A DNA stretch of 64,000 bases from Podarcis pityusensis. Its lineage: Eukaryota. Both the position numbers and the translations under genes were made by a program. The stretch lies in the NCBI GenBank assembly GCA_964106645.2, contig OZ067039.1, one strand, 5' to 3'. The stretch's first letter is position 1; every line of letters begins with the position of its first letter. This document shows positions 1 through 56,090 of the stretch, piece after piece. The notes beneath the pieces were generated by a model that was given only the letters and a program-made list of their open reading frames with translations, did no database searches and had not been told where the DNA came from.

Positions 1-148
1 GGTGTTCTGTTGCGCCAGAAGCGGTTTAGTTATGCTGGCCACATGACCCAGAAAGCTGTCTGTGGACAAACGCCAGCTCCCTTGACCTGAAAGCAAGATG
101 AGTGCTACAACCCCACAGTCAGCTTCGTCCAGGGTTCATTTACCTTTA
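1..148 (+). mobile_element. Sauria SINE, 3' part (truncated by window edge)
   Basis: Matches the 3' half of the copies at 40734 and 55706 (ccagaagcggtttagt...ccacatgacc...gctgtctgtggacaaacgcc) and ends in a tttaccttta tail. Confidence 0.85.
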
Positions 149-7949: not shown

Positions 7950-8087
7950 TGAACAAGGACAGTGGCACTATATTTGTGCCAAGGATTGCTCTAGTGATTT
8001 TATATAAAATGGGAGGAATAAGGAAATCTTTCTCATTGTTACTGCAATAGAACAGGGCCTAAAAGAAAGAAAGCTGGCTATAAACTA

Positions 8088-8384
<297 letters not shown>

Positions 8385-9814
8385 CTAGAGAGAGAGATCT
8401 CTCTACTTTGTGTGCGAGAGATCCCAAACCAGATCTTTGAAAAGGGAATGTTTGCCATTAAAATTTTATTTTGTTTCCATTGTTTCTCTTGAGAAGATAA
8501 TCGTGTTTGGCAGGCCATAGAAAGAAAATAGCAGCATTGCTGGCTGAAGCCTGACTAGAGAATAGAGCACATTTTTGTAACACTGAATTCAGGTCTCCAC
8601 AAAACATGATCCTGGGCTGTCTTTGAGTTCCATTATAACAAAGCTCAAATTTTATTTGGAGAACTTACTGTGTCTAGAGTGTTCCTTGTGTCGTGGAACC
8701 ATTTTATCCAATTAATAAGTTTTATAAAATCATTTTTTAATTTTGTTAGCATGATATTGCACAGCCAATATGGTGTCATGTATTAGCAGTCGTCTGCTAA
8801 TTCACATTTGTGAAAGAATTAGATGCTTTAAAATGTTCCATTACTTTAATACCATGAAAGAAAGCAGCAGCGCTACACTTATAATAGGTTACCTATGCCT
8901 GTATTTCTCCCCACTGTTATAAAAACAACATGCCCCTTGAGACCATAGTTGTATGTAGTTGATCAATCTTTTAAGGGAAGTAATTCTATGGGGAATTTTT
9001 TTTTTAATGGGCACAAGAGTCCATTGCAAATTCCACCTAAGTTTTCTAGCCTTAACACAACGGACTTGCCCAACCCTTTCTCCAATGGTAAAACTGACTA
9101 GCAAGACCAGCCTCCCATGATATATTCTTTATAATTATTTGTACCAAGCTATGAGGCTGTGGGTGAGTCCACAGGTGGAGGCTGGAAGTGAGCAACCGAC
9201 CATCACTTTTCTAAAGAGCTTGCAAAAAGGCTTGAAATAATGTATCTAAAGAGAGATGGGCCCAGAGGCAACTGACAAATTAGAGAGTTTCCCTCAGTTT
9301 GGCCTTTCTAATCTTGTTCACTGACTGAGCAGATTCCATTGCTTTCCTTGAATCCCAAATTGGGGGAGATTCACAAGACTTGGTCCTTTGGTGGTGGGCT
9401 AACTCAGTGACTGCACAGTTTTGATGTGCCAAGACTCGGAAAAGATTCATGGGTTTGATCCTTTTGAGGTGGATTTAGAACTATGCAGCTCCTGTATGAA
9501 ACAGTGGTTGTTGTTTTAAAAAACATGGATTTTGAACAATTTGTCTATTGAATTGAGTTGACAAAGGTATTTGCCGGGTTGGTAGTTTCTATCACAAAGT
9601 GAAAACTGAAGGTTGTGAAAATCTGGCACATTCCCCTTCACCTCATGCATGAACCTCAGAATAAGAAAATAATAAGAAAATATCGGGGGGGGGGGTGTAA
9701 TTGTGTAAATTTATTTCAAGGGGACTTTGCACACACACTTTTTTGTGTAATGCAAGATAGAAGGGACATTTCTATTTCCACTCGCCTTTTCTGTGCATCT
9801 ATGCTGTGCTTCCT

Positions 9815-13356: not shown

Positions 13357-13592
13357 CAGTGGTTCATAACCCCTACCATATGCAACCCATGGGTCCACAT
13401 TTACTTGGCATGGTGACTTGTCAGTTTATTTTCACATGATTTTTGGACCTTTAGGTCCTTGGTGGCCATTGGTTTTGTGCATTTTAGCTGCAAGTTTGTC
13501 TATTAGTTACTTGAGATATTCAAGCAAAAATGAAAAAGCTTTGGATACCCACCCCGCTTGTGGGCCATGAACGACAAGTTGGGGAAATACTG
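13357..13592. mobile_element. Older hAT-type non-autonomous element
   Basis: CAGTGGTTCATAACC ... AGTTGGGGAAATACTG ends; flanked by atctagag / ctctagat. Confidence 0.6.
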
Positions 13593-24403: not shown

Positions 24404-24468
24404 TAGGCATAAAGAAAGTCAAGCTTTCTGTATTGCTTTTATGGTTGTGGGTGGCTACTCTTTCCATT

Positions 24469-24887
24469 GGAAGTGAGAGCTGGACCATAAAGAAGGCTGA
24501 TCGCCAAAGAATTGATGCTTTTGAATTATGGTGCTGGAGGAGACTCTTGAGAGTCCCATGGACTGCAAGAAGATCAAACCTATCCATTCTGAAGGAAATC
24601 AGCCCTGAGTGCTCACTGGAAGGACAGATCCTGAAGCTGAGCCTCCAGTACTTGGGCCACCTCATGAGAAGAGAAGACTCCCTGGAAAAGACCCTGATGT
24701 TGGGAAAGGTGGAGGGCACAAGGAGAAGGGGACGACAGAGGACGAGATGGTTGGGCAGTGTTCTCGAAGCTACCAGCATGAGTCTGACCAAACTGCGGGA
24801 GGCAGTGGAAGACAGGAGTGCCTGGCGTGCTCTGGTCCATGGGGTCACAAAGAGTTGGACACGACTAAATGACTGAACAACAACAAC
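24469..24887 (+). mobile_element. BovB (RTE-clade) LINE, 5'-truncated 3' end
   Basis: Encodes GSESWTIKKADRQRIDAFELWCWRRLLRVPWTARRSNLSIL...WRALVHGVTKSWTRLND; (CAA)n tail; perfect 12-bp TSD actctttccatt (24457-24468 / 24888-24899). Confidence 0.95.
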
Positions 24888-25667
24888 ACTCTTTCCATTA
24901 AACATTTTTTCCATCACTCTGCAGCCTCCCTGGTTGCTTGCACTTCCTAATTTAGAAAAAAATGAGGTAAGAGTTACCCCATGATGTCTTGCCCTGAGCT
25001 ATGTGAAGTAAAGGAAGACAGGGAGGCTGCCTACCAAACACCAGAAATCCGGGCACTCACTTATTTTGGTTTTAAAGGAAGCATTCTCTGCATTCATTTC
25101 TTTTAAAGTAAGAAAAACTCTTCACCTTTTTTTTTTTCCGAAAAAAGGAAAGAAATAAAGCTGTGAGGTCCACAGCAAGACCCCTTCTCATGCTTACAGA
25201 AAAGCCCAGCTGATGACATGAGGATATGGGCACTGAGAAAGTCTGCAGAATTACTGAAATTATAAAACGAAAGAAAAGGCACCCACAAACACAGCTTGAC
25301 CACCCTGAAAGGAAGGCAGCTGCAACAAAAACCATGTACCTTACCTATGAGAATTTTAATACACAAACACAAAACTTCCCTTTGATAATTTTCAAATAAA
25401 ATGTATTTTCCAAGTAAGTGATGGTTAATGGTGTGCAGGGGAAAATGTGGGAAAATTTTTCATATATTCAATGTCCACAATGATTAAAAAAAAACCTTGA
25501 AAGGTTTTGAGCCAATGCAGAGACATACTATGGTGAAATGTCACATAATTCCAGAATCTGTTCCCAAAGACGCATGTAGGAGATCTGACTATTCTTTAAA
25601 ATAATAGTCCTGGTTTGCAATTTCAGTGCAGCCTTGATATTCTAAGTCATATTTCTGAAAGTTTATA

Positions 25668-40733: not shown

Positions 40734-41104
40734 GGGACGCAGGTGGTGCTGTGGCCTAAACCACTGAGCCTCTTGGGCTTGCTGATCGTAAGGTTGGCAC
40801 TGAATTCCTGTGATGGGGTAAGCTCCCGCTGCTCTGTCCCAGCTCCTGCCAACCCAGCAGTGCGAAAGCATGCCAGTACAAGTAGATAAATAGGTACCGC
40901 TGTGGCAGGAAGGTAAACGGCGTTTCCATGCGCTCTGGCTTCCGTCACAGTGTTCCGTTGCACCAGAAGCAGTTTAGTCATGCAGTCCACATGACCCGGA
41001 AAGCTGTCTGTGGACAAACGCCGGCTCCCTCGGCCTGATGTGAGATGAGCGCTGCACCCCATAGTCGCCTTTGACTGGACTTAACCAAACTTTTACCTTA
41101 CTTT
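40734..41104 (+). mobile_element. Sauria SINE, full length
   Basis: GGGACGCAGGTGGTGCTGTGG head, tRNA-related boxes, tttaccttacttt tail; near-TSD taaagagtcaagc / taaatagtcaagc. Confidence 0.92.
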
Positions 41105-42960
41105 AAATAGTCAAGCTAAAGACACAAGCTTAAAGAATCTCACAGACTATGACACTGTCCTACTGCTGTCCCAGAGCATAGGGCTATTAGAAAGGAATAC
41201 CCTCAGGACATTTTCTCCAGTGTCTAGCCTACCTATTATTTTTATTACTAAATTTACTAACTTTATTCATAGATCTCAGGGAGGTTCACAACATAAAATT
41301 ACAACATAAAATATACAATAAAATTAAGAACAAAAACAAGCCAATAATCCCCCCTCCCATAACACATTTAAAAGGGCATCAGATGTCCATAAGCCAAAGG
41401 CCTGGTGGAAGCAGAGTGTTTTCACCTGGCACCTACCTCATGGATGGAGGCCACAGCAAGCTACAGGATTTCTCAGATGGGGAAAACTTCCACTGAAAAA
41501 AGCAAACACAAAAAGGCAGCTTCAAGGATTGTTAAGTTCCCAGCACATTTTGAGTATGGCTTCATCAAAGGAAAATTATCATTTTTGCTCCTTCATAAAA
41601 AAAACTGCTCCATAAAAGCTACATGCTACCACTGCTTTAAGAAGGCTGATTAAGGAACAAATATGAGCATTTTACCCCCGATAAAAGACATACTCAAAAT
41701 GCATTGAGAATTCAGCAAACTTTCAGCTGTCCTTTTATATTTCCTTTTTTCCCCTGTGGATTTTAAAAGCCACTTTCAATAACCCTTCTTCTTGTTAAGA
41801 CCTTAACCACCTGAAAATGGTATCTAAATACAAAGTATAAGAGACAGAAAAAAAGGAACAGAAAAGTGTGTTTTGGGGACCCAAGTCCAAGAAAGGTTTT
41901 AAAAACATAACCACTTAAGAAATATTTTGTTTAAAAGAAATAAAATACAACGTCAAACAATTCTATGACAAGGGCCCCGGACCTTCAGTGCAAACTATTT
42001 TGTTCATAGGAGTGCATGAACAGTGAGCAACTTTAGTTACCAGCGTAATCTCTCTGAGATCAGTTACTTAACTTTCCCTGCCCACAACATCTGCAACATC
42101 AGGCACTCAACCTAAGCCATTCATCTTTAAAATATGTTTTGAATTGCAGTAACAGACTGTTGCTACCTAGTTCCCTTGAATAGAATTTGATTTACTACAA
42201 AGATGCCATGCTGGGGGTGGGCTGGGCTCTTTTGGAGTCATTAAGAGAAAATACTATAAAAGGAATCCCCTAGAGAAACTGTTTCTAGGGTCAGGAAATG
42301 TGAAAAAAATAAAAGTGGTTAAGTGGTGGTCTACTTTAAGAAGTGATTATTCACAGTGCACCTGTAGGAAAAGAAGAAACTCTCTACTGATTCTTCTTAA
42401 GAAGGAGAGACAGACAGAGAGAGGGAGAGAATTCAAAAGTTTGATTACTATAAAGGAAAAAGAAATATTTGGCCTACGTGTTATTTAAATATTAATGTCC
42501 TCTGCCTAAGCAAAAAGTAATATCTAATACGCACTGAATACTTTCCAAACAGCCTTCACAGGTTTATGGCTAAAATCCACAAATCCATTTACTTTAGAAT
42601 AATCTTACTAAAGTCAACAGGACTTCTCGGGAGCAAGAGTGTTCCAAATATGGTTTGTGTGTATTTCTTGAAAAGGAAACAATTATTTTATTTTTTTAAT
42701 GACTGGGATGCATTTCAATCAAAGCACATGCAAAACTAATTTGTAAAGGAAACAACTTTTGTTTCAGCTTTAAAAAAATGAGAGCAGGAGGTGTAGAGCA
42801 GGCAGTGAAGCAACTTTGAAAAAACAACAAAGCGTGTTCTCCCTAGCAGAGAGCACGTGTTGCGGTTGGGAACAGGCCACCCTCCAGTGACTAGGCAAAT
42901 TTAGTTGAATCCCGACCATTTAAATGGTTAAACTGGGTTGCTGGGGTGTTTTGATTGTTG

Positions 42961-42993
42961 CCAATTCGGAGGAGGGGTCAGAGTCTATATATA
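42961..42993 (+). promoter_or_regulatory. Candidate internal promoter of the YR element (CCAAT + TATATATA)
   Basis: CCAAT 42961-42965 and TATATATA 42986-42993, ~130 bp inside the 5' end; motif match only. Confidence 0.35.
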
Positions 42994-43494
42994 CAGGGGC
43001 CAGACGTTGGCACGGCCTCTTGGCCGTTTTGCATCGGATCACATGGAGCACTTGGACAATCTTCTCATTGTCTGGTTACATTTCTTTATTTCTTTATTTT
43101 CCCCTTCTTTTTAATCCTCTCTAGTCCCTTAAATAATTTAATTCCCCCCTTTTCCTGTTCAATTTCCCACCCCACCCCTTACCCTACCCCGTAGGAAGAT
43201 TCTCCCTGTATCTGTGGCTTGCCTTTCCCAATAGGGAGAGAGCCCCCGTTAGGGGCTTTCTTTCGCAAAAAGGTTTCCCCCATTTCTCTTGTTGAAATTG
43301 TGGGGCTAGTCAGGGCTGTTCCCAGCTTAGCTGGTATCACTTTCGTTTATAGTATCCCCGAAGGTTGGCTTTATGGCTCCCTGTGCCTCCAAGGACTATG
43401 AGCACTCTGTATATGCTCTTGAACTATGCTGTTTCTGAACAAGTTTATTTTCTTTAAGTTTGTTTTGCCCTGATAGTGGCGACTGCCATTTTAG

Positions 43495-43575
43495 AGATGA
43501 GCCATTGTGGCTTAGTGGCTAAAGTGTAGGACTAGGACCTGGGAGACAGGGTTCATATACCCCTCTTAGCCATTG
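43495..43575 (+). mobile_element. tRNA-derived SINE head nested in the YR element
   Basis: gtggcttagtggctaaagtg..ggactaggacctgggagacagggttca, similar to the head of the 26053 SINE. Confidence 0.55.
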
Positions 43576-44059
43576 TTATAACAAAACAAAACAAACTGCT
43601 CCTTTTGGGCTATTCTGTTGCTGGGTAGTTCGGCCCATTTGTGATAAAAGAACTTTGGGTTTCTTGAAGGGGTGCTTCCCTCTAAAAGGGCAAGCAGGGG
43701 TACCTGGACAAGCTGTGGGCTACCTCAACTCTGCTATTTCACTGGAAACATTTATGCCTGGCCTAGCAGGTGACCATAGGGCTTTGCCCTAGAATTCGAT
43801 GGCCTGGAAGCGTTTCCGGCCTCAATAGTGTCCCCATGTGGTCCATGAAGCATTGGTTTCACTGGGTCAGCGGATAGTGCCGGTAATGCCTAGGTTGCAG
43901 GATTGGTCCCTGTATGGGACAGCTGCATGCTCCCCCATTGCTCTACCTGGACACTTAAGTCCTTTTGGTGGTTACCTCACTGCGAGGGATGTAACGGGCG
44001 CCATGTTTGCAATATGCAACTGGGAGAAAGCACCTTTGCGTGCGTTGCAGAGCACGGCG

Positions 44060-44650
44060 CTGCACGGGCTGCAATTGCATTGCATTGCTAGGAGATTTGC
44101 AGTTGCATTGCACGGAGTGTGTAGTTGCATTGCACGGAGGGTGTAGTTGCATTGCACGGAGTTTGTTGTCTCATTGAACAGAGGGTGTGCAGTGCACGGA
44201 GTGTGTAGTTGCATTGCATGGAGTGTAGTTGCATTGCATGAAGGGTGTGTGCATTGCAGGGAGTGTGTAGCTGCATTGCATGGAGGGTGTAGTTGTATTG
44301 CACAGAGTGTGTTGTTTTGTTTTGTTTTTGCATTGCACGGAGTGTGTGTGCATTGCACAGAATATGTAGTTGCATTGAACAGAGGGTGTGCAGTGCACGG
44401 AGTGTGTAGTTGCATTGCATGGAGTGTAGTTGCATTGCACGAAGGGTGTGTGCATTGCAGGGAGTGTGTTTTGCATTGCACGGGGTGTGTAGTTGCATTG
44501 CACGGAGGGTTTGTGTGTGCATTGCACGGAGTGTGTAGTTGCATTGCACAGAGCGTGCTTTTTTGCATTGCACGGAGTGTGTAGTTGCATTGCATGGAGA
44601 GTGTGTGCACTGCACGGAGTGTGTTTTTTGCATTGCACAGAGTGTGTGTC
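44060..44650. repeat. Minisatellite, ~20-22 bp unit GTGTGTAGTTGCATTGCACGGA
   Basis: Roughly 25-30 degenerate units; higher-order ~95-bp block duplicated at 44172 and 44373. Confidence 0.92.
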
Positions 44651-44898
44651 TGAAAAGGAAGCTGGCTTGGCGGCAGCTTGGTTGGGACTTCTTTAGGGGT
44701 TCTGGCCAGCATCGGCCCTGTAAATTTACATATGATGGCAGCACAAGATGCCCCCTGCCCAAGCGGGGGCTGGAAGCTGGCAAGCAATAGCTCAATACCT
44801 TTTGCCCATATTCCCATTTTTAGGGATCCAGTTGGATATCGTTGCTAAAACATACCACTTGGCTATGGAGAAGCTGTCTGCCTTGAAGGAAGTTAATT

Positions 44899-45403
44899 TG
44901 TAATACTTCCTCTGTAGCAAGTGATGCTTCACCAGATCCGATCTTGCTGGGTCACTTAACTAATCTTCCCACTAGGCCAGGCTGCCTAGATTTCACCCCT
45001 CCCATATCCAAGAATCTCCTGAGGAGTCTGCTGATTCTCCAGAGAGGAGGAGGCGTGTTCTGGTCTCTACTTATTCTGCTCCAGCACCAAGTCAGTCACT
45101 CAGTCAGTGTCGGAGAGGGAGAGAGACTGAGTGTTAGAGATCATGTGTAGAGATAAGGTTGCTGCTAAGGGCAGCTGCAGACACTCAGTGCAGTGCAGCA
45201 TTTATTTATACTTAGACCTATTAAGCTCTGTATATAGTTTGTATAGTTGTAGATAGAATAAAGAAGATATTCTACAGAGCTGCTCTCCGAGTTGTTTATA
45301 TACTCTGCTAGACTCTGCTGTACTCTGCTGTGCGACGACTGTCCTTTTGTTGGAGTGAATCCGGTGCTCACAACTCTAAGCTGTGAGTCCACAGTACTTT
45401 GAC
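44899..45403 (+). mobile_element. LTR-like insertion interrupting the RT-RNase H region
   Basis: Interrupts the pol-like sequence between ...EKLSALKE and downstream pol remnants; starts TGTAATAC, AATAAA at ~45257; no clear TSD, boundaries approximate. Confidence 0.4.
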
Positions 45404-45539
45404 CTGTTCCTGTGCAGAAGGTGGTCTCTGGAAGTGCTACCCAGCTCGCCTAGCCCAGTTGGGGCTGAAGTGGATGAGTCCAGTTGGTGGCACTGGCTCA
45501 AGGGCGATGCTGACAGAGGTCCCCTTACCTTTGTGTATG

Positions 45540-46030
45540 CCTACCAAGTGTGGTGAAGGCAGATATCAGGCGATGGTAGCAATTCCTGAATGTATGCAAT
45601 AGTAGTTCGCCATGGCAGGATACCTTGAACCCGCTCAGGGATTTTCAGGTTCATGCTGGTGCTGCTGGATCTTTGCCCTTTGGTTTTATTTCAAGGGCTG
45701 CTGGTGTGCAAAGCTATGGCCTCAAGCCTGGTGTGGTGAGGCAATCATGTGACATAACTTTTCTTGAGTTTTCCCCATTGTAGTAGCAGTTCACGTGGCC
45801 CGAGGAGTTCAGTGACCATCGGATCTGCTTTTGGTCTGATAACCAGGTAGTGGTGAGCGTCTTGGCAAAACAGTCCTCATGCTGTAGCACAGTCTCTGCC
45901 CCTCCGCTCATGCTTTCGAGCTGCGCCACTTAAGGTTTAATATTGTGCTTTCTACTCTCCAAATTACGCTGACACTATTCGATTTTCAGATGAAGCGCTT
46001 CAGATCCTGGGCTCCAGACTCAGCTATTGC
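45540..46030 (+). pseudogene. RNase H domain remnant of the YR retroelement
   Basis: Frameshifted KADIRRW*QFLN, DFQVHAGAAGS..FGxYFKGCWCAKLWPQAW, DITFLEFxPIVVAVH.WPEEFSDHRICFWSDNQVVVSVLAKQSS, FQMKRFRSWAPD: the DIRS/Ngaro RNase H signature. Confidence 0.85.
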
Positions 46031-46039
46031 CAGACTTTT

Positions 46040-46945
46040 CCAGACCTGTGGCATTTTGACAACAATTAGTAATTTCAGAGAGCGGCAGCTTCCATTTCCC
46101 CTTCTGCTTTTACCTCTTATGGGAAGGCCTGGATGGATTTCTTAGCCTTAAGCTGGCAGTTCTCGGCCATTCAGAAGAATTGGCCCCCATCCTCTGAGCA
46201 GATCCTGCAGTATTTGGTCCACCTGCTGCAGATTGGGCATGCGGTTATAACTATCCGAATTCAGTCCGCTGCAATGTCTGTTACATTGAAGCTTTATTTT
46301 TCAGAGACCCTTGTATAAAGTTTGCAGTGCGCAGGGCCTTGGAAGGTTGGAATAGGCTCCAACCTCATAGGACAGTGGGCAGGAAGTCGGTCAATTTTTA
46401 CCTATGCAGTATCTGCAACAAGTTAAAACTTGTCTGCGGGTTAAAGATCAAGGTGAGACTACTTTCAGGAGTCCATTGCATTTTCGCACTGAGGGTTGGG
46501 GAAATGGTTGTTGGAGCCAGCACGGGGCTGAAAGTCTGGAGGCTTATTGCTTCAGGACTTTTCCTTATCCTTTGGAGCTTGTCATTAGAGTTGGTAACTC
46601 TAAAACAGACTTAGTGGGCAGGAGTGCCACAATCAGGCTTCCCGCCACAGGTGAGGAGGGCCCTTGCCCGGTTATGGATAACAGAATATTTGGCTTTTTA
46701 TTCCCTGGGGGCTGGCCCGCTCCAGTGCATGAAAATGGGTTCCTGTTAGCCCGGCATCAATGTGCTTACGTCGTGCACCAGTTATTACAGCCTGCGGCTT
46801 GCTTACCGCTGTACACTCCTCATTCCTTACGATTAGGTGCTGCTGCAAAGGCTGCACACTGGGGGCCTGTCAGTAGACAGGATTGTGAATACGGGTCATT
46901 GGAAGTCTGACGCTGACAAGGGTTATATCAGGAAGTGTCACAATG
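46040..46945 (+). pseudogene. Tyrosine recombinase (YR) remnant
   Basis: FALRVGEMV (box I Arg), SKTDLVGR, PCPV, HSLRLGAA (HxxR), GHWKS...GYIR (Trp/Tyr); several frameshifts. Start approximate. Confidence 0.9.
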
Positions 46946-46987
46946 ATGTCTGTGCTGATGCTTGTCTGTTATTTCCTTTTTTCATAG

Positions 46988-47298
46988 GAGCAGCTGTGCA
47001 CATTTGAGCCACAGCATTGTACACTAGGCTGGCAAGCATGTTGACGAGTTTGGACTGGGGCGCCATCTCAGTCTTCCTGCCCATGTGAACATATACTGGA
47101 TGTCCAGATGGGGAATGCTTTGGGAGGAGATCCTTCCTTTGGTGCGGTCGAGTGTGACCTGTGCAGGTCCTCCCGCAGTGCTGGTGGTACAGCTGGGCGA
47201 GAATGTTTGCTGTCTTCCTCCAGCATAAGTTTGCATTCCTGCATGCAAGAGGGCTTGGATTGAGTTGATGGCAGCTCTCCCTGGACTCAAAATAATTT
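46988..47298 (+). pseudogene. SGNH/GDSL hydrolase copy 1, N-terminal half, disrupted
   Basis: VHIx(G)HSIVH*AG...LGRHLSLPAHVNIYWMSRWGMLWEEILP...GPPAVLVVQLGEN...LPGLKII; clear paralog of 48071-48645. Confidence 0.85.
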
Positions 47299-47299
47299 A

Positions 47300-47581
47300 A
47301 GGCATTGGTTCAAGGTGGTCTGGAGGGGGGGTTGGAGCACCTGTCCCCTCCAATGCGCAAAGATGTTCCATTAAGGGAATCCAAGGATTCGCCATGCTTT
47401 TGTCGATCCCTTTTGAGGGGTAAGGCCATGCAAGAGTCCCTGGGAGCATTTGGGGTGAGCTTGAGTCTGATCCTGGTTCATTGCTCCCCCATGCTGTTTA
47501 CTGGAACTGACGATATGGTGGGGCCCAGTCGTCAGTGCTGCCCTGCTGAGGTCAGGTGCAGCTAGTCGGGAACCAATGCCT
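47300..47581 (+). ncRNA. Candidate structured cis-RNA element, diverged copy A
   Basis: aggcattggtt/aaccaatgcct closing stem; tggagggg/cccctcca; ttcc-attaag-ggaa; ggattc/gagtcc; ggggtgagc/gctccccc; actgacga/tcgtcagt; gctgc-cctg/cagg-t-gcagc, then tagtc. Same order as copy C. Confidence 0.55.
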
Positions 47582-47971
47582 AGACAAACTACCACCGAGC
47601 AGGCCTGAAAGCATGTTAATAAGGCGGTGGATAATAGAATAAAATAAATAAAGTAAATAAAATAACAAATAAAATAAAATAGGTCTTTGCTTTAGGTGGT
47701 TCTGTAATATTGCACCCTCCTAATTTTCTTCAAGGCTATTGCCCTCTTTAGGGCAGATGGGGTGCATCTTTCCCCTATGGGGAACGACACCTGGCGGGAT
47801 GCGATTGCCTTGGGATTCATTGCTCCCCCACAATGTTTGCTGGTACTGACGATATGGTGGGGCCCAGTCGTCAGTGCTGCCCTGCTGAGGTCAGGTGCAG
47901 CTAGTCGGGAACCAATGCCTAGACAAACGTACCACCAAGAAGGCCGGAAAGCATGTTAATAAGGCAGTGGA
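47477..47971 (+). repeat. ~155-bp direct repeat pair (47477-47631 and 47816-47971)
   Basis: Both read ttcattgctccccc...actgacgatatggtggggcccagtcgtcagtgctgccctgctgaggtcaggtgcagctagtcgggaaccaatgcctagacaaac...gaaagcatgttaataaggc.gtgga, with a long identical core. Confidence 0.93.
47681..47815 (+). pseudogene. SGNH hydrolase copy 1, displaced C-terminal fragment
   Basis: VFALGGSVILHP..ALFRADGVHLSPMGNDTW, containing the DxxH block V. Confidence 0.8.
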
Positions 47972-47997
47972 AATAAAATACAGGTCGTTGAAATCGA

Positions 47998-48645
47998 ATG
48001 CATTCAAAGATTATGTTCGTTAACATTATTGGTGTCTTACAATTTTTGCTTGTTTTATCTTATTTATCAGGTTTAGCGGTGACCCGTGTTTGGATTGTGG
48101 GGCACAGTATCGTCCATTGGGCTGGCGTCGCAGCACGGCAATCTGGATTGGGTCCAGATTTTGGCTTTCCTCCACATATTCGCTTGTCTTGGCTGTCCAG
48201 ACGTGGGATGCGCTGGTCGGAGTTCCTGCCAAGTATCCGGAGGCAGTTGCTCTTGGAGGGGCCGCCACCTGCTATTGTGGTGCAGCTTGGTGAGAACGAC
48301 CTGGTGCCCATGGACTGTTTGTCACTACGTGCTGCAATTTTGGGTGACCTGGAGACGCTGCGTGCAATGGTGCCGACAGCGAAAATTTTTTGGTCAAAGC
48401 TTTTGCAACGCTGCGTTTGGAAGGGCAGTCGTTGCCCGGCTGCCACTGAAAGGGCCAGAAAACGCATCAATTCTGCTGTGGTCAAAAAAGTTTTGGAGCT
48501 GGGTGGCGATGCAATTTCCCACCCCGAGATTCTTTTTGAGAGGCCATCCTTTTTCCGAGCTGATGGCATGCACCTTTCCGCTTCAGGGAATGAGGCTTGG
48601 ATTGGTGCGGTGGTGACCAAGCTGAGGTCTTGGTTGGGGCTGTGA
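47998..48645 (+). CDS. Intact SGNH/GDSL-family hydrolase (esterase) ORF, copy 2; domain-coding part starts after the acceptor-like site at 48071
   Basis: 215-aa open frame; block I VWIVGHS (Ser), block II RRGMRW (Gly), block III QLGENDL (Asn), block V ADGMHLS (Asp/His) all intact. Confidence 0.85.
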   Translation: MHSKIMFVNIIGVLQFLLVLSYLSGLAVTRVWIVGHSIVHWAGVAARQSGLGPDFGFPPHIRLSWLSRRGMRWSEFLPSIRRQLLLEGPPPAIVVQLGENDLVPMDCLSLRAAILGDLETLRAMVPTAKIFWSKLLQRCVWKGSRCPAATERARKRINSAVVKKVLELGGDAISHPEILFERPSFFRADGMHLSASGNEAWIGAVVTKLRSWLGL

Positions 48646-48982
48646 GTGGTTTGGCGGTGAGCTGAGGGCTCCATGGCGGTTAGGCATTGGTTTAATTGGT
48701 GCTTGGAGGGGTAAGTGCCTACCCCTCCAAATGATGCGAATGGGAATTCCGTTAAAGGAAATCCAGGGGCTTGCCATTCTTTCGTCCTTGTCCCCGGAGT
48801 CGGACTTGGGCCGTGCAAGCCCCACAGGAACATGAGGGTGAGAAGTAATGGTCTGGTGCCCAGCTTTATTTCTCACCCAATACTTGTTTCCCACGCTGGC
48901 TTCCGCTGGTGTCCGGAAGGCCAGCTCTGTCCCTGAGGGCAAGGACAGATAGTCATAACCAATGCCTAAGCAACCACTCACA
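48641..48982 (+). ncRNA. Candidate structured cis-RNA element (multi-hairpin, closed by long-range stems), copy C
   Basis: Stems 48641-51/48972-82 (11 bp), 48680-92/48957-69 (13 bp), 48703-13/48720-30, 48766-74/48815-23, 48836-48/48866-78, 48895-905/48914-25, 48926-32/48943-49. Confidence 0.6.
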
Positions 48983-51513
48983 TTTTTGTATTTGAATAAA
49001 GTTGTGGCCAAAATTATGCCAAAAACCTTAAACAAAAATTGATGTGTGAAGTGTGAATTATTGGGGGGCTACTGTGACTCAACACGCAACAGGCCAACAC
49101 ATGAGGGGGGAAGCATATTGCAGTTTAAAAATTGATTAATGAGGTGCTGACAAACTCATATAAACATGGGGACAGGCAGGCCTGCCAAATCTCAAACCTA
49201 TCCAAATGTTGTGAAGAAAATGCAGTTTTTAATTTGGGACAGGCAAACATAGAGGGGAGGAAAATCAGCTTTAGCATCAAATCTTCATAGATTGTTAGTT
49301 TTCAAATGTATGTGCAGCACTGGAGGTTAGCAGACTGCTAATAAAAATATCAGATGGGGGGGTGTTGGTTAAATTTGTGTATCCTAAATTTACTGTTATT
49401 TGCATTCCTCTGTGTACATCCTTCTTTTGCATTATTAAATAGCTCAATGGCAAATGTTCTGGAAGCTAACAAATCTTCTGGAAATGAAAACTAGAGGTTA
49501 AGAAATCAATCTGTTTATCTGAGTTGGTTAACAGAGCCTATTTATTTGTTAGGGTGCACCACCCAATATTTCAAGATTAGGAATCACATTACTCCTCATT
49601 TTTAACCACAGCCCATTAGGTTTCGCTAGCCAATTAGTTTATGACACATTCCTGGTATTTTCAGTAATCTCCATTTTCACTGGAAGCAAATTTCTACTTT
49701 TGTTTACACTTCTAAACACTGTGTGGAAGAGGCTGGAATGACTTATGGGCAGACTACTCCTCGCAGTACACATCTATTATTATTTTGACTCAAGTCCCAG
49801 CTTTAGCAGGATATTAAAGGCCCAGCCTAAATTTAGGTAGATGCTTTGAGGCCACTAACATGCAGTCTCCTCTTGCTGTTCTTTAAAATTAGATATATAA
49901 AAAGCCATTTGTGTATCTTGTAAAGCAGTGAAACAGCAACAAACGCTACTCAAATCAGAGGAATAGCACTATCTGAGGCTCTCTCTGGGTTTGGATGTAC
50001 CATCCAGGAAAATCCACCTTTTGTTTCTCAGAACTAAGATACAGGCACAAGCTTGTGGGGGAAGGAGGCAGATTTGCAATGGAACAGCAGAAGCTGGCTG
50101 TGCACAGTGCTGACTGGCTGGTGCCCGTGCAGTAATGAACCCCCCCCCCAACTTTGAAACTCTATCAAAATTGGCCATTGTTTTTAAAAAGAGTCTTCAG
50201 GCGTTTTTAGAGGATGTTCAGAAAAATGAGCTCATTCTGAACCAGCCCATTAGTACTTTTAATTACACACTTCAGCATACTCTTACAAATTCATAGAAAA
50301 CACAGGTGCCTGTTTTCCAGCAATATCATTCCTGTATTGTCAGTTGTCTGCCTGACTGATAGGCAAAATTCTAACCATACATTTGCCAGTAATAAATTGT
50401 AGCAAACCCAGGGAAGGAGCAAACCAATAATCTTTTCAGTTGTCGTTTTGTGATGATGCAACAGGTATTTTCCCCCAGTAACGACATAATTCACCCAGTA
50501 ATTTATTCCTGAGAATCCAAGGTGTTGTTTTAAAATTACTCATTTTTAGCACGATATCACCAACAGTAGTGCAGTTATTTCCCGTGTGAACAGACACAGT
50601 GCTATGGTCTCACCTCCATTGGATGGAGTGGTTTTTGATAGGGTTGATGACCCCAGCTGCCTCCGTTACCTGGCTAGCAACACTATGCAACCCCACCTTT
50701 CTTCATTATCTCTCCAAAGTTATATTGGTCCCTAATTAACAACTTAAGATGGCTACATACAAGCCTCCCGGTTTGTTCGTTTCTTACTCTCTCTTTAAAA
50801 ATAAAAATGAATGAATATACACACTGCTTTCCCCCCCTAGCACTGGTGAGGTATACTATTCATGAGGGGCTGGTCACGACTCGTTTCCTGGAAAAGCAGC
50901 AGCAATAACACTTGCAAATTTTGCAGGGAAAGTAATGAGTGCAAGTTTCCCCAGCAGCTGCCAGTGAAAGGACAGGTGGAAGATTTTGCAGGGGAAAGTT
51001 TCTCCAGCACCCAAAACCTGGCAGGAGCTCTAGTTAAAAGGCAAAGGCTTTTTCTTGAAATATATATGTTCTCAAAATATATATTGCAAATTTCAATGCT
51101 GGTGTGCACACTTGTAGCCTTTTTTTATTATTTTGGAGGGGGGAGTGCCTCCCTTTCCCCAGGGTAGCAGCAATGACCGCAGCAACTTTTTACAGGGAAA
51201 GGGGTGGACAGGTGATGTCCCGTCAGTAGGAGGAGGAAGCACAGGAGGCTATCCTTACATCGGGGATTAATCAGCTCTTAATAGGGATAATACTAATAGA
51301 ATGTTAGCATAAATAAACAAGCAAACCTTTTTGTTGGTGCCTCGAAGGACCTTGGAAGACCATGGATTAATTTAATTGTGGTACCACGTCTTACAAAATA
51401 TCACAGGGCAGTGACCCATATCCATCAACTGCTTCTGACATACCTTCTTGCCCCGGCTTTCCATGACCTATAAGACTGGATCTGATCTTACCTGTTTTCC
51501 TGTTTTCATAATA

Positions 51514-55705: not shown

Positions 55706-56052
55706 GGGACGCGGGTGGCGCTGTGGTCTAAACCATTGAGCCTAGGGCTTGCCGATCAGAAGGTCGGTGGTTCGAATCCCCGCAACGGGGTGAGCTCCCG
55801 TTGCTCGGTCCCAGTTCCTGCCAACCTAGCAGTTCAAAAGCATGTCAAAGTGCAAGTAGATAAATAGGTACCGCTCCGGCAGTAAATGGCATTTCCGTGC
55901 GCTGCTCTGGTTCACCAGAAACGGCTTAGTCATGCTGGCCACATGTCTGCGGACAAATGCCAGCTCCCTCAGCCTATAGAGCGAGATGAGCGTGCAACAC
56001 CAGAGTTGTCCATGACTGGACCTAACAGTCAAGGGTACCTTTACCTTTACTT
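55706..56052 (+). mobile_element. Sauria SINE, full length, young
   Basis: GGGACGCGGGTGGCGCTGTGG head, B-box ggttcgaatccc, (ACCTTT)n tail; TSD taccaatcccaa(g/a)agg. Confidence 0.94.
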
Positions 56053-56090
56053 TACCAATCCCAAAAGGCAAAGCTTAAATAACGTTTGTC

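What the first reader, a model, noticed from the sequence alone, without database searches (positions are those of the whole stretch)
47300..48982. Structured ~300-nt RNA-like module after each hydrolase, with pairing kept despite sequence divergence
Seen: copy C (48641-48982) and copy A (47300-47581) share the closing stem aggcattggtt/aaccaatgcct and the same ordered helices: tggagggg/cccctcca; ttcc-N6-ggaa; ggggcttgc/gcaagcccc vs ggattc/gagtcc; gggtgagaagtaa/ttatttctcaccc vs ggggtgagc/gctccccc; gctggcttccg/cggaaggccagc vs actgacga/tcgtcagt; tctgtcc/ggacaga vs gctgccctg/caggtgcagc. They also share short motifs (atgcg, aatcca, gccat, ggccRtgcaag, loop ctgagg, tagtc). In copy C an outer 11-bp stem sequesters the hydrolase stop codon. 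Helices retained with different sequence suggest selection on structure. I do not recognise it as a known family. Inference: a novel cis-acting RNA (ribozyme, export/packaging signal, translation or readthrough element) or an ssDNA structure used in replication.
Basis: partly seen in the sequence, partly recalled or inferred. Interest (0 to 1): 0.85.

Follow-up and report, generated by a model that had tools for sequence, protein, structure and literature searches.

The report
Folded RNA in Ngaro terminal repeat
The 3' terminal repeat of a lizard Ngaro retrotransposon folds into a conserved, apparently undescribed RNA structure, and a small hairpin at its edge marks the repeat's boundary from lizards to distant animals, which gives a testable handle on how these elements export and copy their RNA.

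Summary
The structure is real. Copies C and A fold better than shuffles (z -7.2, -3.3) and, with a Lacerta homolog, independently give one six-branch fold; 15 of 16 two-sided changes keep the pair, and G-U pairs favour plus-strand RNA. It is not a hydrolase cassette signal: module C is the 5' part of the B repeat of a Ngaro tyrosine-recombinase retrotransposon (A1-ORFs-B1-A2-B2); module A is an internal relic from another subfamily. Homologs show three layers: (1) a hairpin ending in TGGC(A/G)G that marks B's 5' boundary in lizards, Xenopus and metagenome loci (29/56 loci versus 10/606 background); (2) a lineage-specific closed domain of 250-300 nt; (3) a helix beside the poly(A) signal that forms only at B2 (5/5, covarying). 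The hydrolase has a phase-conserved splice acceptor, implying spliced and unspliced RNAs. Best reading: a cis-acting export/packaging domain inside a reverse-transcription frame. Function is inferred; no RNA reads were obtainable. No Rfam match, no known ribozyme core, no readthrough frame, no paper found. The scan's first readers noted the same fold on other DNA of this genome.

The parts
42829..43042 (+). A1 repeat of the Ngaro element (left end; TATA-like run at 42986-42993)
   Evidence: matches both A1 and A2 of the P. muralis copy L001
45517..46022 (+). decayed RT/RNase H remnant
   Evidence: tblastn with intact L057/L060 ORFs, which carry RVT_1
45974..46932 (+). decayed tyrosine recombinase remnant (frameshifts, stops)
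46988..47265 (+). hydrolase 1, broken: splice-acceptor-like site before it, in-frame stop, internal deletion after about residue 77
47260..47299 (+). damaged remnant of the stop codon / boundary hairpin in front of module A
   Evidence: DNA alignment to L057; no hit with motif model R1
47300..47581 (+). module A: P1-closed six-branch domain only (P2 47322-47351, P3 47365-47380, P4 47381-47443, P5 47445-47495, P6 47506-47536, P7 47537-47562); internal relic of another subfamily's B1 region
47582..47815 (+). fragment of a hydrolase C-terminal half with an A-rich expansion, joined directly after module A
47816..47921 (+). third, partial module (P6, P7, P1 3' arm), 94-96% identical to the 3' half of A
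47975..48023 (+). last codons of a second recombinase gene
48071..48645 (+). hydrolase 2, intact SGNH/GDSL-like ORF, entered through a pyrimidine tract + AG acceptor at 48069-48070
48641..48651 (+). P0 5' arm (holds the stop codon); exists only in the B1 context
48648..48679 (+). boundary hairpin: TGGCGG (48652-48657), inner hairpin, TGGCGG (48674-48679); B begins within the second motif
48674..49089 (+). B repeat (B1); the window copy ends here and lacks A2-B2
   Evidence: matches B1 and B2 of L001
48681..48968 (+). module C: P1-closed six-branch domain (P2 48705-48728, P3 48747-48760 with GTTAAA loop, P4 48766-48823, P5 48827-48890, P6 48895-48925, P7 48926-48949)
48972..48982 (+). P0 3' arm
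48995..49009 (+). AATAAA followed by the conserved 9-nt motif that pairs with the A2-B2 spacer in the B2 context of intact elements; GU-rich stretch at about 49040-49060

Best explanation
The module is a cis-acting RNA domain of the B terminal repeat of Ngaro retrotransposons, acting on the element's own plus-strand RNA. Shown: it lies between the last stop codon and the poly(A) signal, is closed by stem P1, is kept by compensatory change, is present at B1 and B2, and sits in two different frames (B1: stop-codon stem P0 plus the TGGCRG boundary hairpin; B2: a spacer helix next to AATAAA). Shown at sequence level: the hydrolase is entered by a conserved splice acceptor, so the element should make spliced and unspliced RNAs. 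Inferred: the P1-closed domain is a protein-binding platform for nuclear export and/or packaging of the unspliced genome (works like a CTE/RcRE/psi signal), while its frame serves reverse transcription: minus-strand DNA starts near the 3' end of the RNA at B2, copies spacer, A2, B1 and the ORFs, jumps between the short transcribed ends of A, copies the B|A junction and B1 a second time, and stops or switches to B2 at the TGGCRG hairpin, which is why B begins there. Skipping the last switch, or recombinase excision of A2-B2, would give A1-to-B1-only copies such as this one.
For: Position in B and double occurrence. Fold and covariation. Plus-strand RNA: 7 G-U vs 1 A-C, and an invariant U-G pair in the B2 helix; RNA folds better on + in all ten modules. 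B boundary inside the second TGGCRG in four vertebrate and two metagenome elements; motif enrichment 29/56 vs 10/606. B2-only helix in 5/5, with two-sided changes between lizards and Xenopus. Splice acceptor 19/25, all in one codon phase, controls 0/15, 0/28, 6/49; RefSeq models and database proteins join the ORF1 N-part to the hydrolase. Module A was carried to a second insertion site as the P1 domain alone, without boundary hairpin or poly(A) signal, so the domain is separable. Retroviruses with spliced RNAs use structured elements of about 350-430 nt for export of unspliced RNA (PMC11379458; PMC4488727 abstract).
Against: The inside of the domain is not conserved between lineages: six branches in lacertids, four in Phrynocephalus, about 130 nt in Xenopus, so no universal protein-binding motif was found; the TTAA hexaloop is lacertid-only. 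Covariation rests on 4-5 lineages with hand-set registers. The B2 helix is individually weak in lizards (4.6-13.5% of shuffled spacers do as well). About half of the hydrolase loci lack the boundary motif. Splicing rests on sequence signals and gene models.
Confidence: 0.55

Rival explanations
1. The domain is a geometric spacer: it only has to fold up so that B's 5' boundary lies next to the RNA's 3' end for priming or template switching; its inner helices bind nothing specific.
For: Closing stem and frame are conserved while inner content changes between lineages; P1 brings TGGCRG within about 40 nt of AATAAA.
Against: Within lacertids loops and linkers are conserved too (GTTAAA loop, GCCAT/GCAAG loop, TAGTC); 250-300 nt is more than a spacer needs; module A persisted without its frame.
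Confidence: 0.2
2. The main job is a poly(A) switch: the same AATAAA is read differently at B1 and B2, letting some transcripts run through B1 to make full-length genomes.
For: P0 covers the AAT of AATAAA at B1 in L058 and L061, and the spacer helix clamps the bases after AATAAA at B2 in 5/5; GU-rich downstream stretches are present.
Against: Predicted accessibility of AATAAA shows no consistent direction between B1 and B2; this explains the frame but not the six inner branches.
Confidence: 0.1
3. A new self-cleaving ribozyme, most plausibly the boundary hairpin, cuts the RNA at TGGCRG and so creates B's 5' end.
For: An invariant G-rich internal loop beside a variable hairpin coincides with a sharp repeat boundary across distant animals.
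Against: No Rfam hit; no hammerhead or HDV-like descriptor match on either strand; only 6-10 conserved bases; boundary position varies by up to 5 nt.
Confidence: 0.06
4. A folded single-stranded DNA site for the tyrosine recombinase, like an integron attC, making hydrolase+module units into cassettes.
For: Tandem hydrolase+module units downstream of a recombinase gene; DIRS-1 cDNA is single-stranded (PMC7192593).
Against: Element-host junctions map to the B|A junction 107 nt beyond the module, a short palindrome in L001 and L057; unit joints fall inside coding fragments, not at the module; G-U bias points to RNA; DNA energies favour neither strand.
Confidence: 0.04
5. A stop-codon readthrough or translation element for the hydrolase.
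For: P0 contains or adjoins the stop codon in four lizard elements.
Against: In-frame extensions are 4, 4, 131, 25, 37, 1, 15, 13 and 10 codons, with all three stop types; B2 has no ORF before it.
Confidence: 0.03

Closest known systems
Ngaro-like tyrosine-recombinase retrotransposons with SGNH hydrolase (e.g. Xenopus DIRS-53_XT; PMC9210276)
   Same: ORF order gag, RT/RH, YR, hydrolase; split direct repeats A1, B1, A2, B2. The window element is a decayed, rearranged member.
   Different: The papers found describe the repeats only as identical sequence blocks; none mentions RNA structure, a boundary motif, a B2-only helix or a spliced hydrolase.
Retroviral and LTR-retrotransposon RNA export elements (MPMV CTE, HERV-K RcRE, HIV RRE, MusD MTE)
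   Same: Structured, 250-430 nt, near the 3' end or in a terminal repeat of an element with spliced and unspliced RNAs (PMC11379458).
   Different: No sequence match tested or found; host is a YR element, not an LTR element; activity untested.
Retroviral R/U5 poly(A) hairpin and packaging signals
   Same: One repeat read in two contexts, with structure around AATAAA (own knowledge).
   Different: Here both copies lie in the 3' part of the element and the partner strand comes from outside the repeat.
Hepadnavirus epsilon and LTR primer-binding sites
   Same: A stem with an invariant internal loop at the point where reverse transcription is inferred to start or switch (own knowledge). (G)TGGCRG resembles the start of a tRNA-Leu primer site as seen in ta-TRIM (PMC4558846).
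   Different: The two bases that would pair with the tRNA's terminal CA are not conserved; no terminal-protein domain was looked for; mechanism untested.

Membership tests
Ngaro-like YR retrotransposon | gag, RT/RH, tyrosine recombinase ORFs in that order | tested here: met
   remnants in the window at 45517-46932; intact in homologs L057, L060
Ngaro-like YR retrotransposon | split direct repeats A1, B1, A2, B2 | tested here: met
   complete in L001 (93.6% identical family member), L057, L058, L060; the window copy keeps A1 and B1 only
Ngaro-like YR retrotransposon | SGNH hydrolase ORF after the recombinase | tested here: met
Any Rfam family | covariance-model hit at gathering score | tested here: not met
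Hammerhead ribozyme | CUGANGA - stem II - GAAA core | tested here: not met
   ten regions, both strands
HDV-like ribozyme | nested double pseudoknot with catalytic C in J4/2 | tested here: not met
   simple descriptor; Rfam
CTE/RcRE-type export element | host element makes spliced and intron-retaining RNAs | tested here: inconclusive
   phase-conserved acceptor and spliced gene models; no RNA reads
CTE/RcRE-type export element | promotes export of unspliced RNA in a reporter; binds NXF1 or an element-encoded adaptor | not testable with these tools
   needs experiment
tRNA primer-binding site | 8-18 nt complementary to a tRNA 3' end including CCA | tested here: inconclusive
   only (G)TGGCRG is conserved; positions -2 and -3 vary; no host tRNA set available
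Integron attC-like ssDNA site | recombination crossover lies in the folded site | tested here: not met
   junctions at B|A, outside the module
Programmed readthrough signal | conserved in-frame extension after the stop | tested here: not met

The most novel reading that the evidence does not exclude
Ngaro elements run a retrovirus-like RNA programme without tRNA primer sites or LTRs: a spliced Gag-hydrolase mRNA, a CTE-like domain for the unspliced genome, self-priming from the RNA's own 3' end folded onto the A2-B2 spacer, and an ancient TGGCRG hairpin that stops or switches reverse transcriptase and so defines the B repeat.
Probability: 0.2. Interest if true: 0.85.

Novelty: new variant of a known kind. 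Interest (0 to 1): 0.62.

Why it matters
I found no experimental account of how split-direct-repeat elements (Ngaro, PAT, VIPER) prime reverse transcription and rebuild their ends; among YR retrotransposons I found such a study only for DIRS-1, which has inverted repeats (PMC7192593). The three structural layers give exact positions to test: RNA ends and cDNA ends at TGGCRG and at the B2 helix, export activity of the P1 domain, and a spliced Gag-hydrolase product for an ORF that the literature lists as without proven function. The motif is also a marker for annotating B repeats in animal genomes.

Tried and rejected
Rfam on the window and six homolog loci: nothing at the module. ARAGORN: no tRNA/tmRNA. 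Viral contigs: no relatives. Three contig look-ups returned nothing. Structural MAFFT modes not installed; RNAalifold on the plain alignment of the boundary hairpin gave no structure because hairpin lengths differ, so a descriptor search was used. One search had register slips in P7 and P0; only the corrected one search is quoted. G-quadruplex folding of the boundary hairpin is not favoured. A pseudoknot from the TTAA loop is not conserved (inspection). My first reading of module A's tail as a poly(A) relic was wrong: it is hydrolase coding sequence.

Full report
Setting. The window is lizard DNA: the intact hydrolase at 48071-48645 is 89% identical to a Podarcis muralis protein, and the element is 93.6% identical over 3 kb to a P. 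muralis copy, L001, which sits at a different insertion site (flanks do not match). Remnants of RT/RNase H (45517-46022) and tyrosine recombinase (45974-46932) precede the hydrolases. This is a Ngaro-like element with SGNH hydrolase and split direct repeats, as described for Xenopus (PMC9210276).

Observation. Copy C folds at z -7.15 and copy A at z -3.32 against dinucleotide shuffles; a sliding scan finds the lowest z-scores of the scanned part of the element at these places and at B1 of a Lacerta element. Folded one by one, window A, window C and L001 C give the same closing stem P1 with six branches, and Lacerta L057 contains the same helices. After alignment, 25 pairs are predicted in all of A, C and L057; hydrolase coding controls give 0, and neutral divergence of C gives a mean of 3, maximum 16. 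RNAalifold finds 74 pairs, 21 with a two-sided change. In hand-registered ungapped helices 15 of 16 two-sided and 7 of 10 one-sided changes keep pairing, with 7 G-U and 1 A-C; these counts come from 4-5 lineages and from helices chosen because they were predicted, so they are support, not a formal test. Rfam gives nothing.

What it is. In L001 the stretch matching window 48674-49089 occurs twice, as B1 and B2 around A2. Young elements with 99-100% identical repeats show the same in Lacerta (L057), a second Podarcis family (L058) and Xenopus (L060). Module C is therefore the 5' 300 nt of the B repeat, between the last stop codon and AATAAA; it follows a hydrolase only at B1. The window copy ends at the B|A junction and lacks A2-B2; L061 also ends after its first B. 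Module A is 73-75% identical to C and L057. It is the P1 domain alone: the hairpin before it is damaged, and it is joined just after P1 to a hydrolase fragment, followed by a 3'-half duplicate, the last codons of a second recombinase and hydrolase 2. L001 has the same patchwork, so it moved as one non-autonomous unit.

Layer 1, boundary hairpin. Just after the stop lies a G-rich strand, a hairpin of variable sequence and length, and TGGC(A/G)G. A descriptor finds it in 29 of 56 hydrolase loci (27 in the expected register; some loci are near-duplicates) against 10 of 606 background windows. The loci include lacertid, agamid, skink and Xenopus elements and many metagenome contigs that carry the same ORF set; I did not identify their hosts, though similar proteins are named from molluscs. 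B begins inside this second motif in L001, L057, L058, L060 and in metagenome loci L006 and L009. About half of the loci lack the motif, partly in clusters on the hydrolase tree.

Layer 2, closed domain. P1 with the core GCAYTGG/CCARTGC is shared by lacertid and most agamid modules. The inside is lineage-specific: six branches in the window's clade, with an invariant-looking TTAA hexaloop hairpin in seven lacertid modules; a different four-branch fold, itself covarying, in two Phrynocephalus elements; about 130 nt in Xenopus.

Layer 3, two frames. At B1 the outer stem P0 pairs the stop-codon region with sequence before AATAAA, reaching into AAT in L058 and L061. At B2 the end of the A2-B2 spacer pairs, with probability near 1 in 5 of 5 cases, with the conserved bases right after AATAAA; lizards and Xenopus differ by two-sided changes and a U-G pair is invariant. 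Per element this helix is modest in lizards (46-135 of 1000 shuffled spacers as good; 0 for Xenopus) and AATAAA accessibility shows no consistent direction. The spacer is itself a conserved fold.

Splicing. 19 of 25 hydrolase ORFs have a pyrimidine tract and YAG just upstream, all 19 in one codon phase; controls give 0/15, 0/28 and 6/49. RefSeq models for L057 and L059 splice the ORF1 N-part to this acceptor, and several database proteins are ORF1-N plus SGNH. This implies spliced and intron-retaining RNAs; it rests on signals and gene models, not on reads.

Mechanism (inferred). An element with an intron-retaining genome needs export and packaging signals; retroviruses use structured elements of similar size and position (PMC11379458). 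I assign that role to the P1 domain, which is separable (module A) and has conserved loops within its clade. The frame fits reverse transcription: the 3' end of the RNA at B2 is held against the spacer; minus-strand synthesis through spacer, A2, B1 and ORFs, a jump between the transcribed ends of A, and a second pass over B1 would rebuild both ends; a stop or switch at TGGCRG explains why B1 equals B2 exactly from there. A tRNA-Leu primer site is possible (PMC4558846) but the bases facing the tRNA's end are not conserved. Confidence 0.55 for this combined reading; a purely geometric spacer 0.2; poly(A) switch as main role 0.1; ribozyme 0.06; ssDNA recombination site 0.04; readthrough 0.03.

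Novelty. The element family is known. Ten paper searches found no description of RNA structure in Ngaro repeats or of a spliced hydrolase; subscription papers and Repbase notes, including the original Goodwin and Poulter reports, are not in the library, so prior mention cannot be excluded. First readers of this scan noted the same fold on other pieces of this genome; these are unchecked notes and I do not count them as support.

Noticed in passing
window 48045-48071 and 46960-46988; L057 10102 and 13502-13508; L059 10159: Phase-conserved 3' splice acceptor before Ngaro hydrolase ORFs, with gene models joining the ORF1 N-part to the SGNH domain, like a retroviral env-type subgenomic mRNA.
   Followed up: partly
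L001 106071-106244; L057 14764-14928; L058 11446-11620: The A2-B2 spacer is a conserved, covarying fold, and A2 with its TATA-like box could drive a short structured non-coding RNA (spacer + B2).
   Followed up: partly
L001 106071, L057 14764, L058 11446, L060 11116, L006 about 1441, L009 about 1861: A C-rich tract (CCCACCC-like) follows A2 in vertebrate elements and occurs in metagenome loci; it reads as a polypurine tract on the minus strand and can pair with a G-rich tract near the 3' end of B in lizards.
   Followed up: partly
L058 9642-11988: A 2.3-kb element with perfect repeats that keeps only the 3' half of the recombinase and an intact hydrolase.
   Followed up: partly
window 42829-49089; L061 up to about 17700: Copies that end at the first B|A junction (no A2-B2), suggesting recombinase excision of A2-B2 or a shorter circle.
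   Followed up: partly
window 44060-44650: Array of about 25 copies of a 20-22-nt unit inside the element, also in L001, where ORF1 would be.
   Followed up: no
proteins P0021, P0026, P0031, P0038, P0145: Gecko and herring gene models with four to six SGNH domains; may be domesticated or chained Ngaro hydrolase exons. Contigs for two of them were not on record; the others were not looked up.
   Followed up: partly
window 48683-48689 / 48960-48966: The P1 core has the same letters as the tRNA-Gly acceptor stem as I recall it; from memory only, probably chance.
   Followed up: no
L056 (hydrolases at 8052-8642 +, 1059-541 -, 10979-10698 -): Three different Ngaro elements clustered within 17 kb in Phrynocephalus, each with its own B-region fold.
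   Followed up: partly
window 2-90, 40735-41085, 55706-56054; 24468-24889: Common lizard repeats (SINE-like copies and a high-copy 420-nt repeat also frequent in L001).
   Followed up: no
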